Below, piece by piece: positions 19,704 to 32,820 of a stretch of 64,000 nucleotides of DNA (the first letter of the stretch is position 1; each line of letters opens with the position of its first letter). Source of the stretch: Pocillopora damicornis (lineage: Eukaryota); contig NW_020844097.1 in assembly GCF_003704095.1 (NCBI RefSeq), positions 1-64,000 on the forward strand, written 5' to 3'. The notes beneath the pieces were generated by a model that saw nothing but the letters and a program-made list of their open reading frames with translations, did no database searches and was not told where the DNA came from. Position numbers and translations under genes: made by a program.

Positions 19704-22700
19704 ATGTGGTCGGATTTTTGTCAGTGCAAAGAGCAAGCATTATTCACACTCGCAGCTTGTTTGTTTCTGTGGAATGCTGACCAAGCTTTCGCTGCGGTTG
19801 AAGCAAACTGCAGTCTCATGCAACCTCCTTCGAACTGTCCGGAAATACCATGCCCAAGATGTGTACGTCTTTCAAGCTTTTCAAGAAAGCCGTATGTTTT
19901 CAAAGATGGCAATTCTACTGACGGGTTTCTTTATGGTGAGTTCTGTTTATGCGTTTTTTTTAATTTTCTTTTGTTGATGCGGTCACAGTAACCTTTATTA
20001 GTGGCTGTCAGAATTATCTGTTCCACAATTCATGTGAACGGCTTTTATACATCTTGTCATCAAAATAAGTGCTAAAGGGAACTTTCCATTCCACCCTTCC
20101 GTCTCGCTTCGTGTATTATTGTGGAAGTGCTTTATGAAAGTAGGTTTACATGGCCTAGCCATTTTGTTTACAGTACACGCCTTTCAGTGTGACAGGGCTA
20201 GGATTAGATTTAGGGAAATGTGGTTTGAATCGATACAGTTTTTTAATCACTTCATATCATCAACGGCCGTTACAAAGAGTTTTTCTCACACGTCATTATT
20301 ATGCCAACGCGTATTACTGTAAGAGATGACTTCGCGACTGCCTGATTTTTTTATCCAATTTTTTTGAAGGATTCTGATCCCAAGATATTAATTATTAATC
20401 TGTATTTAATGCAGTTTTAATTTACCACTTTCTCATTTTCATTTCAAAGACACAATCTCGAGTAATATAAATAATAAATAAACAACTATCAGTGCAATGT
20501 AAAAACCACAATGAACGTGGAAATTCAACAGCTGCTTTGATAAGTCGGTTTCGTATTATTCAGGGAGGCATTTGCTATGTCTATCAAATTGGCCACCTTC
20601 TGAGAAATCAGCCCAGAAATCATAAAAGAATGAGTACAAAACTACAATATGAAACTAGATGGGGAAAACAAACGAAAAAAATTCAAAATAAAATTTGAAA
20701 AGTCCTCGTTTCAGATAACAGGAATGAAAGCTGGCGAACAACAAAGGTCTCCAAATCTACTCGACATATGTCTTTTTTGCTGTTATTGTTCGGTGTGAAC
20801 TTCACGTATTTTTTCATAAGTAAACGCAATTATATATGGACGCAATATCTATTGAAGCCGTATTTTAGAGGGCTTTCCCAAATTTTTAAGATAAAAATTT
20901 CTGGCCTCCTCCCTCTCCAATTTAAAACAGCTTCTCTTACCCTGACCCCACTAACTCAAAAATTATAAAAGATTACTGCAGATCCCAAATGACGAATTTG
21001 GAAATATTTAGTTTAAAATTTTTGGCACACACAAACTTTGCCTAAACTAATTTGACAAAGAAAATTGTATTTTCACATCAGAATAAAAATTAATTTTATT
21101 TTCTATTTCATTTCTAAAAGTCGTGTTTCCAAATCATTTTCTTGCATCTTATCTGCACTGTCCAGTTATCCTTTAATGGAAAGATTATCCCAAATTTCCC
21201 ATCTTTTCAGAATAGGGGGTGATAGTTTTATAACTTCTTCATAACCATATGAATTTCTTTGACCTTAAACAAAACCTAGCTTTCGCAACTCTTGGTTCGA
21301 ACTTCGTTACCTTCCTTCAGATTTTTGTCATCAGTTTTAAACTCTCTTTGTCCTCCAGCTCCTGTAATGAGTGGCCTCCAAACGGGAAAAGGCCGTAGGC
21401 CTGTAGTCCTCTTCTCATCACAACTTGAGCTGGCCAAGGCCCACGACAGAGTCAATTTAATTTTTCAACCCCAATATAATATCTTGTTGATGGCCAGTTC
21501 TTCCAGCTCTCTGTCTTTTGCGTTGAGAAATAGAAAGAATTACTTTCTTAAGAGCTTAAATACAAACGTTTTTGTAATATTGTAATCCTTAAATACAGTG
21601 AGAAAAAATACGAGGTCACGACACTTACTCTTGATTATCATCGGGTAAAATTGAATAAAAAGACTTTGAATAGGAATACGGTGAACGGAACGCCTGAGGG
21701 ATCAAAGAAATATATTGGAGGTGGAGGTTTCTTTGAATTAACCAAAACATAATTATTTGCATATATGTATTAGTTTAGATTCACTTAAACAGCAAGTCTC
21801 GATGTAAGATCCTAAAATTCAATCGTTCAAATTTCAACCATATTTTTTCTAGCTTGCCATTAGAACGTTGGTTCCAAAACGATGATCAAAATATAAGTAA
21901 TGAACGTCTTTGAGTGTTTCCTTCTGAACCATAACCGCAAAGGATCAGTTAAGATAAGTTAGTAACCGCTGAAGTCACGATTGATAGCTGTTGTGAGTAA
22001 ACCATTCAAGTTTGTTTTGCCCATTGACAGCTCTTGGGCGAGAGACCACAATAGCAGCAAGCGTTGATATAGATCGTACTTGCTAAAATTTCTTTTCAAA
22101 GAGGGAGGACCAAATGTCGCTTGAGATTGCTTAAGTAAGTCTCGAGTAAGATCATGGGGAAGAGTTGACATGGAATGATGGAGGCGAGACTAAAACTTGT
22201 TTAGGAATAACTTTTGACCGAGTCATTCATTTTTCGGATTAACAATAGAGAAAAATGTATTTTACATTTCTTGCACTTTGTTCTCAATTAGCTCTTGTAG
22301 ACCTCCTGTTAAGCAAGTGTTGTGGTAACCTCACCTCAGGCTGTTGGCAAATGATCCACCACTCCCCGGAAACAGATCCTGAGCAGCTGTTAAGTACAGT
22401 GAAAGACTCTCATCTGATATATCCAGTGTTAGTAGACAAGCAGGACATGGCAAGCGAGAACCATCACCTGATTGGTCTCGTCCCCCCTGGTAGCATAGCT
22501 TTTGTTGTTCCTAAAGGAGAGCGGGACAATTATCCAAAGAAGCTAATGATGGCAGTATTTGAAGCTTGGCCGGTGTTGATATTAACAATTCTACTTTCAA
22601 TTTTGGCGGGAGTTTTTCTGTGGCTTTTGGTGAGTGTTTATCTGTTCTTTCCTTTTTCTCCCCTGTGATTCAGGGGGCGTCAGAGATTCTGAGATCAGCT

Positions 22701-31700: not shown

Positions 31701-32820
31701 ATGGAACTCTCTCCCAGACACTTACAAAACAGTATATTTTCTAGAATTCAAGCAGGAGATCCTCAGATGTGAAGCTTTTCCACAGTAGATCTACAAGTTC
31801 TATTTCCCTCTGCATGCATAATGTTGTGTATAGTTTATAAATAATATGGGAATTGTAATATAGCAATTTTTTAGTTTCTTGTCATTTAAGAAGTGACGTG
31901 TTACCAATTGCGTCTCTACTTGAAGCACCCATAGCCACAACCTGCTCCTCTTGGCCTCTAAACGTTTCATATGCACACCAGATGACAGAGTTCCGTGAAA
32001 ACGCTTCAATTTTCCTACCAGTCATCTTTTCATGTTAATTAAGCGTCGTTTGATGCAAATGGAAGTTTATTCAGTTTAACAGAGACACTCTTCTAAAAAT
32101 GATTATCATTGTCGCGAAGTAAGCGTTTTCATTCTTATGTAATTAAACAAAAAGAGAGTGTTTTTCTTGTTTTGTTTTATTGCTGTTTGTAGGGAGGAGG
32201 AAACGAGGCGGTGCAGAACTCTCAGAGTATTTTTGATCCCACCGGTGATTTGTTTTTCCCTTCGTTGTACTCCTGCCTCGTTTTGATAGCCGTTATTTTC
32301 TTCATTGGCTTGACAGCTGAGGTGTTGTTCTTTAAATCATGCCGATGTCCAAAGAAGAGACGCAAAAAGGGTAAGTCTTTTAATTGCCTTCTTCCTTTTA
32401 AACATGCTCATGGGAAATGTATCTTCAGGGACGGGGTTAGCTATGATTATTTAATTTGGCGTGGATCACTTTACTGTCTTATTTGAGTATATTTCTGTAA
32501 CAATCTTGGGACACAAAAGCACCCTTTCCTTGCCAAAAAGGAGAAAAAAAGAATCGGCCCGCCTTGTGGTCATAAGCGTTAAAAGGTCTTCATATTCCCG
32601 TAAGTGATCAACCCACTTTTTAATTTGATTTGCTGTTTTAGATGAAGAGTTCACAGGGGCAATAGCTGTGAATGAATTTAATGGTGGGCTGCCAGCTCTT
32701 GATCAGATGGAGATTGAAATGATGAGTGATATACGAGCTTTGTTTGCCAAGTACCGCGAAAGGCTTCAGGAGTGGGAAAAAGCTGAAAATAACGGAAACG
32801 CCTCTACATCTGATGCATAA
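19704..32820 (+). CDS. GluR0/iGluR-like ion channel with a K+ selectivity filter (signal peptide-S1-M1-P[TTVGYGD]-M3-S2-M4), 503 aa
   Basis: Nine GT-AG exons with consistent phases: 19704-19935, 22292-22629, 23820-23914, 24233-24389, 25128-25191, 25412-25465, 25714-25928, 32193-32370, 32642-32820 (1512 nt, no internal stop). Motifs: KPYVF..DGFLYALVDLL (S1); WPVLILTILLSILAGVFLWLL (M1); EGFWWAFVSMTTVGYGDRSPRSILGR (pore); SIFTATLTTSL (M3, SYTANLAAF-like); VGVLKRS...QAD...ALDQGEIEGILLD (S2); LYSCLVLIAVIFFIGL (M4). Confidence 0.92.
24410..24920. repeat. Degenerate (AGT/AGC/AAC)n trinucleotide low-complexity tract in intron 4 of the channel gene
   Basis: Runs such as GCAGTAGCAATAGTATTAGCAATAACAGTAGC. 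Produces spurious Ser-rich and Val-rich ORFs. Confidence 0.9.
26880..27295 (-). mobile_element. Crypton-like non-autonomous remnant
   Basis: Minus-strand peptide MAAPRFVNVAEEVINVMEK...TKDATEFGKT resembles the N-terminus of animal Crypton-V proteins (recalled pattern). The terminus AACAATATTCACTGAGCCTGAGGTGAAAAATTGTT is partly palindromic. Confidence 0.45.
27297..29290 (+). mobile_element. Degenerate Penelope-like element (RT + GIY-YIG endonuclease)
   Basis: KWVIDLSS, ADKGRASVV, YKQQDGAVMGSPVSAVIANIY, RYVDDTF, YRKPTHIDQYL, GVVCKIPCECGKVYIDETGR. Many frameshifts and stops. Confidence 0.9.
29228..29285 (+). ncRNA. Hammerhead-ribozyme-like motif at the PLE 3' end (core variant CAGATGA)
   Basis: C(A)GATGA-AGAC-loop-GTC-GAAA-CGTC. 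A second copy at ~54270-54320 reads CTGAAGA...CGAAA. PLE termini are known to carry minimal hammerheads. Confidence 0.55.
29300..31900 (+). mobile_element. CR1/L2-group LINE ORF2 (APE C-half + RT), frameshifted
   Basis: GDFNADLL, TLLDLILT, DHSLV (APE); NYRPVTVL, IDLSKAF, GPQGSVLGPMFFNIFINDL, YADGHQIY (RT); YGLHSFSYLASKLWNSLP (C-terminus). Confidence 0.92.

What the first reader, a model, noticed from the sequence alone, without database searches (positions are those of the whole stretch)
19704..32820. Intron-rich animal GluR0-like channel: iGluR architecture with an intact K+ filter (TTVGYGD)
Seen: the spliced 503-aa product has signal peptide, S1, M1, WWAFVSMTTVGYGD pore, M3 (SIFTATLTTSL), S2, an extra C-terminal TM and a short tail, with no amino-terminal domain. 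Established: canonical animal iGluRs (AMPA/kainate/NMDA/delta) lack the K+ signature. The split-LBD plus TVGYGD combination is known from cyanobacterial GluR0 (no M4) and rotifer AvGluR1. The S2 segment VGVLKRS...QAD...ALDQGEIEGILLD closely follows GluR0 S2 as I recall it. Eight spliceosomal introns, one inside the filter (GG|A), argue for a resident host gene rather than bacterial contamination. Inference: a little-characterised ligand-gated, K+-selective (hyperpolarising) receptor family with an extracellular sensor and inverted pore. The ORF track misses it because the filter is split across exons.
Basis: partly seen in the sequence, partly recalled or inferred. Interest (0 to 1): 0.9.

Follow-up and report, generated by a model that had tools for sequence, protein, structure and literature searches.

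The report
Coral GluR0-like potassium-filter receptor channel
This is a real, spliced and transcribed coral gene for a glutamate-receptor-shaped channel that keeps a textbook potassium-channel filter. It belongs to a large family found across Cnidaria that the glutamate-receptor papers I could search do not mention.

Summary
The + strand carries a 9-exon gene with 8 GT-AG introns. The coding sequence runs 19704-32820 and the transcript 19590-33128. It encodes 503 aa. One intron splits the filter codons (TTVG|YGD, GG|A).

A 1934-nt transcriptome contig carries the same ORF with one residue different. RNA contigs from three separate studies show the predicted splice joints.

An AlphaFold2 model (mean pLDDT 82) matches only iGluR ligand-binding-plus-transmembrane chains in Foldseek. 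Its split S1/S2 domain superposes on periplasmic binding proteins, including the GluR0 ligand-binding core (Z 19.3).

TTVGYGD is invariant or nearly so in 81 homologues. Every shared domain is closer to cyanobacterial GluR0 than to a canonical iGluR of the same genome. Unlike GluR0, the protein has an M4 helix. Unlike AvGluR1, it has no amino-terminal domain.

The family occurs in Anthozoa, Scyphozoa and Hydrozoa, with at least 62 exon matches in this genome. Some members carry very large adhesion ectodomains.

The arginine that normally anchors the ligand's carboxylate is not conserved, so the ligand is probably not a standard amino acid. K+ selectivity and ligand gating remain inferences.

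The scan flagged a sister finding on other DNA of this genome (s1-762899).

The parts
19590..33128 (+). Whole transcript, including 114 nt of 5'UTR continuous with exon 1 and a 3'UTR reaching 33128
   Evidence: The 1934-nt transcriptome contig L013 maps to the window in 9 colinear blocks at 99-100% identity.
19704..19935 (+). Exon 1 (CDS): start codon, signal-like helix, Cys-rich start of S1 (residues 1-77, phase-1 donor)
   Evidence: A loose end of the RNA contigs at 22291 reads the last 30 nt of this exon.
22292..22629 (+). Exon 2: rest of S1 plus M1 (residues 78-190). Its donor sits right after the M1 motif W-x-L.
   Evidence: The same donor position is found in 11 paralogues. RNA joint at 22629|23820.
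23820..23914 (+). Exon 3: pre-pore segment, pore helix and first half of the filter (ends ...TTVG, GG|)
   Evidence: Pfam Ion_trans_2 profile positions 26-41.
24233..24389 (+). Exon 4: second half of the filter (|A TAC GGT GAC = YGD), then M3 with the gate-like motif FTATLTTSLT
   Evidence: Pfam Ion_trans_2 positions 41-78 (1e-07) and Lig_chan positions 60-99. RNA joint at 23914|24233 in three studies.
25128..25191 (+). Exon 5: start of S2 (VGVLKRS..., includes S281)
25412..25465 (+). Exon 6: S2 helix (...ALDQGEIEG)
25714..25928 (+). Exon 7: core of S2, including D318 (25725-25727) and the invariant Y348-G349
   Evidence: hhalign of S2 against GluR0 S2: probability 97.6%.
32193..32370 (+). Exon 8: S2-M4 linker, M4 helix (residues 406-435, nt 32253-32342) and the basic stretch KKRRKK
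   Evidence: A loose end at 25929 reads the start of this exon.
32642..32820 (+). Exon 9 (CDS part): cytoplasmic tail with a long helix (residues 462-494), stop codon TAA at 32818-32820
23904..24242 (+). Selectivity-filter codons T219-D225, split by the 318-nt intron 3 (23915-24232)
   Evidence: T219, T220, G222, Y223 and G224 are invariant; V221 and D225 are present in 80 of 81 sequences.

Best explanation
The window holds one expressed member of a large ion-channel family found across Cnidaria. The family belongs to the ionotropic glutamate receptor (iGluR) superfamily and is of the GluR0 type. The protein has a signal peptide and an extracellular two-lobed binding domain made of S1 and S2. 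Between S1 and S2 sits a pore module of M1, pore helix, filter and M3. After S2 come a fourth membrane helix (M4) and a cytoplasmic helical tail. Because S1 and S2 are outside the cell, the potassium-channel-like pore is inverted, with its TTVGYGD filter towards the cytoplasm, as in GluR0 and iGluRs. The likely mechanism has four steps. Four subunits form one pore. A small extracellular ligand closes the clamshell. This pulls on the M3 helices and opens the gate. K+ then flows out, holding the cell near E_K, which is a hyperpolarising or shunting (inhibitory) signal. Shown here: gene structure, transcription and splicing, the fold, filter conservation, closeness to cyanobacterial GluR0, and vertical inheritance within Cnidaria. 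Inferred: tetramer formation, K+ selectivity, ligand gating and the direction of the signal. The ligand is unknown. It is probably not recognised the way a standard alpha-amino acid is, because the usual S1 arginine is missing while the S2 aspartate that normally binds an amine is kept.
For: Gene model and single residue difference from P0208. Spliced transcript contig L013. Splice joints in polyA/oligo-dT RNA contigs from three studies. P0208 hits Pfam Ion_trans_2 at 53 bits and Lig_chan at 33.0 bits, above the 30.8 cut-off. AF2 model with mean pLDDT 82 and S1/S2 blocks mostly 88-97. Foldseek: the best 500 PDB hits are all iGluR LBD-TMD chains, E about 1e-13 over about 450 columns. VIA-align: residues 47-384 against binding proteins give Z 19.3, rmsd 3.0 over 208 residues for the GluR0 core 1II5, and Z 18.9 for 2PYY. 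hhalign against a cyanobacterial GluR0 alignment: TMD 99.9% (E 6e-32), S2 97.6% (E 5e-12), S1 80% (E 1e-5); cross controls 0.4% and 27.6%. The filter and pore helix (GFWWAFVSMTTVGYGDR.P) are nearly invariant in 81 homologues, and D318 is Asp in 78 of 81. Evidence that the N-terminal half is extracellular: a signal-like N-terminus, N-x-S/T sites and conserved Cys in S1, KKRRKK just after M4, and paralogues with CUB, Ig, FN3 or pentaxin domains directly upstream of S1. In the tree, the orthogroup of 8 (SH-aLRT 96) follows the Actiniaria/Scleractinia split, and the cnidarian clade has support 100.
Against: No current has been measured. AvGluR1 has TXVGYG and still passes Na+ (PMC3483616), so the motif alone does not prove selectivity. 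The carboxylate-binding Arg is not conserved: family columns 129-131 are D/S/E, V/T/S and T/K/S with Arg in only 6 of 81, and the window gene has D-M-A there. The binding domain could therefore have lost classical ligand binding. Pfam does not recognise the LBD. The full-model TM-scores to iGluR chains are low (0.3-0.45) because the predicted domain orientation differs.
Confidence: 0.78

Rival explanations
1. Same architecture, but the channel is a non-selective cation channel (depolarising) despite the K+ signature, as reported for AvGluR1.
For: PMC3483616 states that AvGluR1 has TXVGYG yet is permeable to Na+. The inverted setting and the M3/M4 packing differ from those of classical K+ channels.
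Against: It is not only the motif that is conserved. The whole pore helix, the aromatic cuff and the post-filter Asp (FWWAF.SMTTVGYGD) are close to invariant and align with Shaker, KcsA and Lmo2059 at E 5e-15 to 1e-11. GluR0, which has a very similar pore module (hhalign E 6e-32), is K+-selective according to PMC12332018.
Confidence: 0.17
2. The clamshell no longer binds a small ligand. The protein would then be a constitutive or otherwise regulated K+ channel, or a subunit gated through partner proteins or ectodomains, with S1/S2 serving only as a scaffold.
For: The canonical S1 Arg is absent. Many paralogues replace an ATD with huge adhesion or lectin ectodomains, which suggests macromolecular cues. 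No Pfam SBP or Lig_chan-Glu_bd hit.
Against: The clamshell is modelled with high confidence and matches ligand-bound PBPs at Z about 19. The S2 amine-binding position D318 (78/81), S/T281 (77/81) and Y348-G349 are strongly conserved over a divergence that spans cnidarian classes. That conservation is hard to explain without a binding site.
Confidence: 0.2
3. The sequence is bacterial contamination or a very recent horizontal transfer, not a resident animal gene.
For: The nearest non-cnidarian relatives are cyanobacterial GluR0 proteins.
Against: There are eight GT-AG introns, confirmed by RNA. A retroelement lies in intron 7. GC content matches the flanks. Intron positions are shared with paralogues. 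The genome holds at least 62 family exon matches. Orthologues follow the species tree, and the cnidarian clade is separated from the bacteria by a long branch with support 100.
Confidence: 0.01
4. Question of origin, not function: the family arose by an ancient transfer of a GluR0 gene from a bacterium (possibly a cyanobacterium) into the cnidarian stem lineage, followed by gain of M4 and introns, rather than by vertical retention of a pre-iGluR ancestor.
For: S1, TMD and S2 each score far better against GluR0 than against a canonical iGluR of the same genome: 20.5/99.4/75% versus 0.5/2.2/0.6% with single-sequence templates. No non-cnidarian eukaryotic relative appeared in the search.
Against: The M4 helix, and its Glu followed by an aromatic residue three positions later, line up with canonical iGluR M4, but only weakly (E 0.008 to 0.012). 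The bacterial sample is narrow and the tree has no outgroup. The length filter of the search would have hidden long relatives such as AvGluR1.
Confidence: 0.35

Closest known systems
GluR0 (Synechocystis PCC 6803 and other cyanobacteria), the prokaryotic K+-selective glutamate receptor
   Same: The order S1, M1, pore loop with TXVGYGD, M3, S2 is the same. There is no amino-terminal domain. The pre-pore segment is alike (N-P-E-x-F-P ... G-x-x-E-G). It is the best non-cnidarian match in every shared domain. The LBD superposes on the GluR0 cores 1II5 and 2PYY at Z 19.3 and 18.9.
   Different: The coral protein has an extra M4 helix and a cytoplasmic helical tail, a signal peptide, conserved extracellular cysteines and 8 introns. 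It lacks the conserved S1 arginine that the GluR0 alignment keeps. Identity in S1/S2 is only 12-14%.
AvGluR1 (rotifer Adineta vaga), the eukaryotic iGluR with a K+ signature
   Same: Both are animal iGluR-type subunits with M4 and a TXVGYG filter (PMC12332018, PMC11479355).
   Different: By those papers AvGluR1 has the same architecture as eukaryotic iGluRs, which from general knowledge includes an amino-terminal domain. This protein has none. AvGluR1 is amino-acid gated and Na+-permeable (PMC3483616, PMC11479355). Here the amino-acid-anchoring Arg is missing. I could not obtain the AvGluR1 sequence, so I made no direct comparison.
Canonical metazoan iGluRs (AKDF, NMDA, Epsilon and Lambda clades)
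   Same: The overall LBD-TMD fold is shared: Foldseek's best 500 hits are all such chains. M3 carries a gate-like motif (FTATLTTSLT versus YTANLAAFLT). S2 carries LLD-S/N-Y versus IWDS or LLES. M4 is present. Alignment to a coral iGluR is colinear.
   Different: The filter is a K+-channel filter, not the Q/R/N-site loop. There is no amino-terminal domain. Pfam Lig_chan-Glu_bd does not hit the protein, and none of the 31 PF10613 exon matches in this genome lies on a family locus. hhalign to a canonical iGluR of the same genome gives only 19% probability.
Classical K+ channels (KcsA, Lmo2059, Shaker/Kv)
   Same: The pore helix and filter are nearly the same as in Shaker and KcsA. Profile hits reach E 5e-15 to 1e-11, and Pfam Ion_trans_2 scores 53 bits.
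   Different: The membrane orientation is opposite. There is no voltage sensor or RCK/CNBD domain. Gating would come from an extracellular clamshell attached to both pore helices, and there is an extra M4 helix.

Membership tests
iGluR superfamily (GIC family; GluR0 / iGluR / GLR) | A two-lobed type-II periplasmic-binding-protein fold built from two separated segments: S1 before M1 and S2 after M3 | tested here: met
   VIA-align gives Z 19.3, rmsd 2.9-3.0 over 204-208 residues, spanning model residues about 47-384, to GlnBP, 1II5 and 2PYY. hhalign of S1 and S2 against GluR0: 80% and 97.6%.
iGluR superfamily (GIC family; GluR0 / iGluR / GLR) | An M1 / re-entrant pore loop / M3 module inserted between S1 and S2 | tested here: met
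   Pfam Lig_chan 33.0 bits (cut-off 30.8, profile positions 6-100 of 146) and Ion_trans_2 53 bits on P0208. hhalign of the TMD against GluR0: 99.9%.
iGluR superfamily (GIC family; GluR0 / iGluR / GLR) | Inverted pore topology: binding domain outside the cell, pore loop entering from the cytoplasm | tested here: met
   From sequence only. The evidence is a signal-like N-terminus, N-glycosylation motifs and conserved Cys in S1, a basic cluster right after M4, and paralogues with CUB, Ig, FN3 or pentaxin domains directly upstream of S1. Not shown experimentally.
iGluR superfamily (GIC family; GluR0 / iGluR / GLR) | Conserved S1 arginine that binds the ligand's alpha-carboxylate (GluA2 R485 position, from general knowledge) | tested here: not met
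   Alignment columns 126-135 show no conserved Arg (at most 7 of 81). The window gene has D129-M130-A131. The GluR0 alignment keeps the Arg. The mapping is uncertain by about 2 residues.
iGluR superfamily (GIC family; GluR0 / iGluR / GLR) | Acidic S2 residue that binds the ligand's amino group (GluA2 E705, GluN1 D732 or GlnBP D157 position, from general knowledge) | tested here: met
   D318 is Asp in 78 of 81 and Glu in 3 of 81, in the motif LLD-S/N-Y. It aligns with IWDS of the coral's canonical iGluR.
GluR0 / AvGluR1 subclass (K+-signature iGluRs) | The K+ channel signature TXVGYG in the pore loop | tested here: met
   TTVGYGD in the window. It is invariant or present in 80 of 81 across the family.
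GluR0 / AvGluR1 subclass (K+-signature iGluRs) | Amino-acid-gated, K+-permeable current | not testable with these tools
   Needs electrophysiology.
Eukaryotic iGluRs (AKDF, NMDA, Epsilon, Lambda, AvGluR1) | A third membrane-spanning helix, M4, after S2 | tested here: met
   Model helix at residues 406-435, followed by KKRRKK. Foldseek alignments of about 450 columns to LBD-TMD chains. The sequence match to canonical M4 is weak (E 0.008).
Eukaryotic iGluRs (AKDF, NMDA, Epsilon, Lambda, AvGluR1) | An amino-terminal domain (ANF_receptor / LIVBP-like) before S1 | tested here: not met
   Only about 45 residues precede S1. There is no ANF_receptor hit, whereas the coral's canonical iGluR has one at 177 bits.
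Eukaryotic iGluRs (AKDF, NMDA, Epsilon, Lambda, AvGluR1) | The SYTANLAAF gate motif in M3 | tested here: inconclusive
   The window has S-I-F-T-A-T-L-T-T-S-L-T. Five of ten positions match Y-T-A-N-L-A-A-F-L-T, and T252, A253, T256 and L259 are at least 90% conserved.

The most novel reading that the evidence does not exclude
Cnidarians carry a large, so far unrecognised clade of the iGluR superfamily, a fifth metazoan group beside AKDF, NMDA, Epsilon and Lambda. It still has a working K+ filter. These would be ligand-gated inhibitory K+ channels. Their binding domain has given up the classical amino-acid anchor and so responds to some other chemical. In paralogues with CUB/Ig/FN3/pentaxin ectodomains of up to about 4000 aa, the channels may respond to matrix or cell-surface cues. 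The clade is closer to cyanobacterial GluR0 than to any animal iGluR. It is therefore either a surviving pre-iGluR lineage or an ancient bacterial gift to the cnidarian stem.
Probability: 0.45. Interest if true: 0.85.

Novelty: new variant of a known kind. Interest (0 to 1): 0.77.

Why it matters
The usual account of how glutamate receptors arose (binding protein plus K+ channel, then GluR0, then modern iGluR) rests on two proteins: bacterial GluR0 and rotifer AvGluR1. This gene belongs to a whole animal family with an intermediate build. It has the GluR0-like S1-pore-S2 core with a canonical K+ filter, it has the eukaryotic M4, and it lacks an amino-terminal domain.

The family has dozens of copies per coral genome and orthologues in sea anemones, octocorals, jellyfish and hydroids. 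That makes the GluR0-to-iGluR transition testable in animals that can be worked with, such as Nematostella, Hydra, Hydractinia and Clytia.

If the channels are K+-selective and ligand-gated, cnidarians would have a fast inhibitory receptor class of a kind not known in bilaterians. The missing arginine points to unknown ligands. The metazoan iGluR phylogenies I read, up to 2026, list only the Lambda, NMDA, Epsilon and AKDF clades and do not mention this family.

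Tried and rejected
- **Exon-by-exon searches.** Pfam and PDB sequence searches found nothing for the S1 and S2 exons. The binding domain is too diverged for single-exon searches.
- **Joined spliced model.** I did not send a joined translation of the window's exons to any search or folding tool. 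I used database protein P0208 instead, which matches the exons with one residue different.
- **PDB profile search.** The search with alignment A2 listed only K+ channels among its best 60 hits, so it said nothing about the LBD.
- **Tetramer model.** There is no verdict on tetramer formation.
- **Protein Atlas.** It did not hold P0208. The orthologue P0117 gave cnidarian clusters first, then Lig_chan/SBP_bac_3 clusters from algae, plants, giant viruses, bacteria and arthropod IRs. I treat these as leads only.
- **Canonical iGluR comparison.** hhalign of S1, S2 and the TMD against the coral's own canonical iGluR gave no significant match (0.5-2.2%).
- **Tree.** The tree with cyanobacterial GluR0 has no independent outgroup, so it cannot decide between horizontal transfer and vertical descent.
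- **Literature.** The Janovjak 2011 paper is not held, so statements about AvGluR1 come from papers that cite it.
- **Tandem paralogues.** None is present in the window.
- **Species.** P0230, the representative of a protein cluster for which a source gives a Pocillopora damicornis name, matches this genome at 89-98% per exon. This does not prove the species.

Full report
**The gene model**

Candidate exon ends have GT donors and pyrimidine-rich AG acceptors.

A profile built from the S1-M1 exon of this gene and 11 paralogous exons of the same genome was searched against 1.84 billion protein representatives. It found 1224 clusters at E <= 0.001 and 590 at E <= 1e-10. A follow-up search with the closest full-length hit, Nematostella LOC5510096 (P0117), returned P0208. 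P0208 is a 503-aa protein predicted from a transcriptome assembly.

Threading P0208 through the window gives nine exons: 19704-19935, 22292-22629, 23820-23914, 24233-24389, 25128-25191, 25412-25465, 25714-25928, 32193-32370 and 32642-32820. There are eight GT-AG introns and a 1512-nt CDS. A single residue differs (P102 in P0208, S in the window).

P0208 stood in for it.

**Transcription and splicing**

P0208 is encoded without interruption on a 1934-nt Logan contig of run ERR9592210 (L013). That contig maps to the window in nine colinear blocks from 19590 to 33128 at 99-100% identity. This adds a 114-nt 5'UTR and a 3'UTR.

Independently, RNA runs hold 0.20-0.30 of the sampled words of window:22200-26000, where exons make up 0.24 of the stretch. 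Contigs from three polyA or oligo-dT studies (X2, X5, X18) carry joints at 22629|23820, 23914|24233 (the filter intron), 24389|25128, 25191|25412 and 25465|25714. Their loose ends read the end of exon 1 and the start of exon 8. The condition 'transcripts do not join these exons' is therefore not met.

**A resident host gene**

- GC content is the same as in the flanks.
- Intron 7 holds decayed reverse-transcriptase fragments.
- Intron 4 holds a minisatellite.
- The donor after M1 is at the same codon in all 11 paralogues examined.
- In three paralogues the open frame begins with T-rich, intron-like codons that run straight into YGDR. This fits the filter intron being shared, although I did not check their acceptor sites.
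- The genome (234,350,878 bases in 4393 contigs) has 62 matches to the S1-M1 profile at E <= 1e-5, many in tandem clusters. That compares with 31 exon matches to the canonical iGluR S1 model PF10613, all at other places.

Paralogue L002 is nearly the same as a Stylophora pistillata protein. The RNA runs are labelled coral or marine metagenome. The assembly size and contig number match my recollection of the Pocillopora damicornis assembly, but that is memory, not a test. One search gives 89-98% identity per exon to the representative of a protein cluster for which a source gives a P. damicornis name.

**Fold**

Pfam sees only the pore: Ion_trans_2 at 53 bits and Lig_chan at 33.0 bits, against a cut-off of 30.8 and covering only profile positions 6-100 of 146. 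It finds nothing in S1 or S2.

An AlphaFold2 model of P0208, made with an 81-sequence family alignment (A2), has mean pLDDT 82. The S1 and S2 blocks are mostly at 88-97. The model has an alpha/beta pattern, a helix at 406-435 (M4) and a helix at 462-494.

Foldseek against the PDB returns only iGluR LBD-TMD chains among its best 500 hits (GluA1-4, GluN1/2B, GluD2). E is about 1e-13 over about 450 columns. The TM-scores are low (0.30-0.47) because the predicted LBD-TMD orientation differs.

VIA-align on the same hits superposes model residues about 47-384, skipping the membrane part, on type-II periplasmic binding proteins. Z is 19.3 and rmsd 2.9-3.0 A over 204-208 residues. The GluR0 ligand-binding core with glutamate (1II5) ranks third, and the Nostoc GluR0 core (2PYY) fifth. 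The condition 'S1/S2 do not fold as a clamshell' is therefore not met either.

**Sequence relationships**

The first non-cnidarian hit of P0117 is P0308. P0308 carries SBP_bac_3, Lig_chan and Ion_trans_2, and its relatives are cyanobacterial (Synechocystis salina, Crocosphaera, Microcystaceae).

hhalign results:

| Comparison | Probability | E-value |
|---|---|---|
| Family alignment vs P0308, 308 colinear columns from S1 to S2 | 99.5% | 2.6e-22 |
| TMD vs 38-sequence GluR0 alignment (A3) | 99.9% | 5.6e-32 |
| S2 vs A3 (97 columns, 14% identity) | 97.6% | 4.7e-12 |
| S1 vs A3 | 80% | 1.4e-5 |
| Control: S1 vs S2 | 0.4% | |
| Control: S2 vs S1 | 27.6% | |

With single-sequence templates, the values against GluR0 are 20.5% (S1), 99.4% (TMD) and 75% (S2). 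Against a canonical, intronless iGluR of the same genome (L014: ANF_receptor + Lig_chan-Glu_bd + Lig_chan) they are 0.5%, 2.2% and 0.6%.

The full alignment to that canonical iGluR is weak (19%, E 0.0012) but colinear. It pairs FTATLTTSLT with YTANLAAFLT, LLDNY with IWDSI, the YG of S2, and the M4 helices with their Glu.

The protein is thus GluR0-like in S1, pore and S2, and iGluR-like in having M4.

**Pore**

In 81 family members T219, T220, G222, Y223 and G224 are invariant. V221 and D225 are present in 80 of 81. The pore helix G-F-W-W-A-F-V-S-M is 90-100% conserved. The profile hits Lmo2059, KcsA and Shaker/Kv chains at E 5e-15 to 1e-11.

S1 follows a signal-like N-terminus and carries N-x-S/T sites and conserved cysteines. 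In paralogues it is directly preceded by CUB, Ig, FN3 or pentaxin domains. M1 must therefore run from outside to inside, and the filter faces the cytoplasm. This is the inverted arrangement of GluR0 and iGluRs.

A canonical filter raises the odds of K+ selectivity but does not prove it. AvGluR1 has the motif yet is permeable to Na+ (PMC3483616), whereas GluR0 is K+-selective (PMC12332018, PMC11479355).

**Ligand site**

The GluR0 alignment keeps the S1 arginine (consensus I-S-I-T-x-x-R). In the cnidarian family no column from 126 to 135 has Arg in more than 7 of 81 sequences. The columns that align with it are D/S/E, V/T/S and T/K/S, and the window gene has D129-M130-A131. The mapping is uncertain by about two residues, and a Lys occurs nearby in a minority of sequences.

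On the S2 side, the position that binds the ligand's amine in GluA2 (E705), GluN1 (D732) and GlnBP (D157), by my knowledge of those structures, is Asp in 78 of 81 (D318). S/T281 and Y348-G349 are also conserved.

I read this as a functional binding cleft with an unusual, still unknown ligand. The alternative, a scaffold-only domain, is kept as a rival.

**Distribution and history**

Named members come from:

- Hexacorallia: Nematostella, Actinia, Actinostola, Oculina, Porites, Montipora, Acropora, Stylophora, Pocillopora, Desmophyllum
- Octocorallia: Dendronephthya, Xenia, Paramuricea
- Scyphozoa: Rhopilema
- Hydrozoa: Hydra, Hydractinia, Clytia

All are annotated as uncharacterized, as 'potassium channel domain-containing', or mislabelled as Kv, YugO or cubilin. 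No other eukaryote appeared in that search, but its length window would hide long proteins.

In a quick maximum-likelihood tree the cnidarian sequences form one clade (support 100), far from the cyanobacterial ones. The window's gene sits in an orthogroup of eight (support 96) in which sea anemones are sister to stony corals. Another subfamily contains hexacorals, octocorals, a jellyfish and hydroids. The family therefore predates the cnidarian crown group and has been inherited vertically since then. Its earlier origin, retention or ancient transfer, is not resolved.

Some members replace the missing amino-terminal domain with CUB+Ig (P0013, P0037). Another carries about 3600 residues of pentaxin, laminin-G, fibrinogen, TLDc, F5/8-C, MAM and FN3 domains (P0031).

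**Literature**

Searches combining GluR0, AvGluR1, cnidarian, Nematostella, selectivity filter and TVGYG found no paper that describes this family.

The metazoan iGluR phylogenies of 2018, 2025 and 2026 list only Lambda, NMDA, Epsilon and AKDF. None mentions a potassium-filter clade. A 2026 preprint on hydrozoan glutamatergic systems is also silent. Subscription journals are not covered, so prior description cannot be excluded.

The scan's own notes list a sister finding on other DNA of this genome (s1-762899) and a giant-ectodomain channel (s1-762900). I treated these as leads only.

**Verdict**

The gene is an expressed member of a large GluR0-like branch of the iGluR superfamily found across Cnidaria. 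It has a canonical K+ filter, an M4 helix, no amino-terminal domain and a non-canonical ligand site.

I rate it a new variant of a known kind, with interest 0.77. The function, a ligand-gated hyperpolarising K+ channel, is the best-supported mechanism but remains untested. A tetramer model could not be run.

Noticed in passing
window 27371-31788 (+), inside intron 7: Decayed retroelement remains. Two RVT_1 fragments (30424-30861 and 30813-31277) lie in different frames. Further upstream there are long ORFs with an RT-like YVDD motif near 28230 and an endonuclease-like ORF at 29471-30214 with no Pfam hit. They make up much of the 6.3-kb intron.
   Followed up: partly
window 24417-24843, intron 4: Imperfect minisatellite (units of 12, 18, 24 and 57 nt built on GCAGTA-like hexamers). 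It leaves all three + frames open and creates long false ORFs. RNA-library contigs of X1 and X5 cover it, perhaps as unspliced RNA or contaminating DNA.
   Followed up: partly
window 25466 joined to 32193 (run X2): One RNA contig ends exon 6 and continues with the first letters of exon 8, so it skips exon 7 (215 nt). That would shift the reading frame. It may be a rare mis-spliced or regulated isoform.
   Followed up: no
window 22363: The only residue difference from the transcriptome protein P0208: the window has Ser and P0208 has Pro at residue 102. It is probably an allele or strain difference.
   Followed up: no
window 45684-46376 (-): A 230-aa ORF with a cytochrome b5-like haem-binding domain followed by a SOCS box. 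This is an unusual pairing and may be one exon of a neighbouring gene.
   Followed up: no
window 783-1616 (-): A 277-aa ORF with a weak zf-RVT hit. It is likely another retroelement remnant, next to assembly gaps.
   Followed up: no
L014:1509-4409 (G000:C2500:195008-197908): A canonical iGluR (ANF_receptor + Lig_chan-Glu_bd + Lig_chan, with SAYTANLAAF and IWDS motifs) encoded as a single uninterrupted 966-aa ORF in this otherwise intron-rich genome. It may be a retrogene.
   Followed up: partly
G000 contigs C2688, C2502, C629, C374, C2218, C2563, C1935: The K+-filter family lies in tandem clusters of three to eight S1-M1 exon matches within tens of kb (some genes give two matches). A few of the matches contain stop codons and may be pseudogenes.
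   Followed up: partly
P0031 (Nematostella LOC5501224, 4084 aa); P0013 and P0037 (CUB+Ig forms): In some family members the S1-pore-S2 core follows huge ectodomains: 4 pentaxin, 4 laminin-G-like, fibrinogen-C, TLDc, F5/8-C, MAM and 9 FN3 domains. Paralogous loci L005, L007, L008, L010 and L012 of this genome also have FN3- or Ig-like exons just upstream.
   Followed up: partly
P0208 residues 462-494 (window 32692-32790): A confidently modelled, conserved cytoplasmic helix after M4 (family consensus rich in E, L, W and K). It may be a coiled-coil assembly domain like those at the C-termini of some K+ channels.
   Followed up: no
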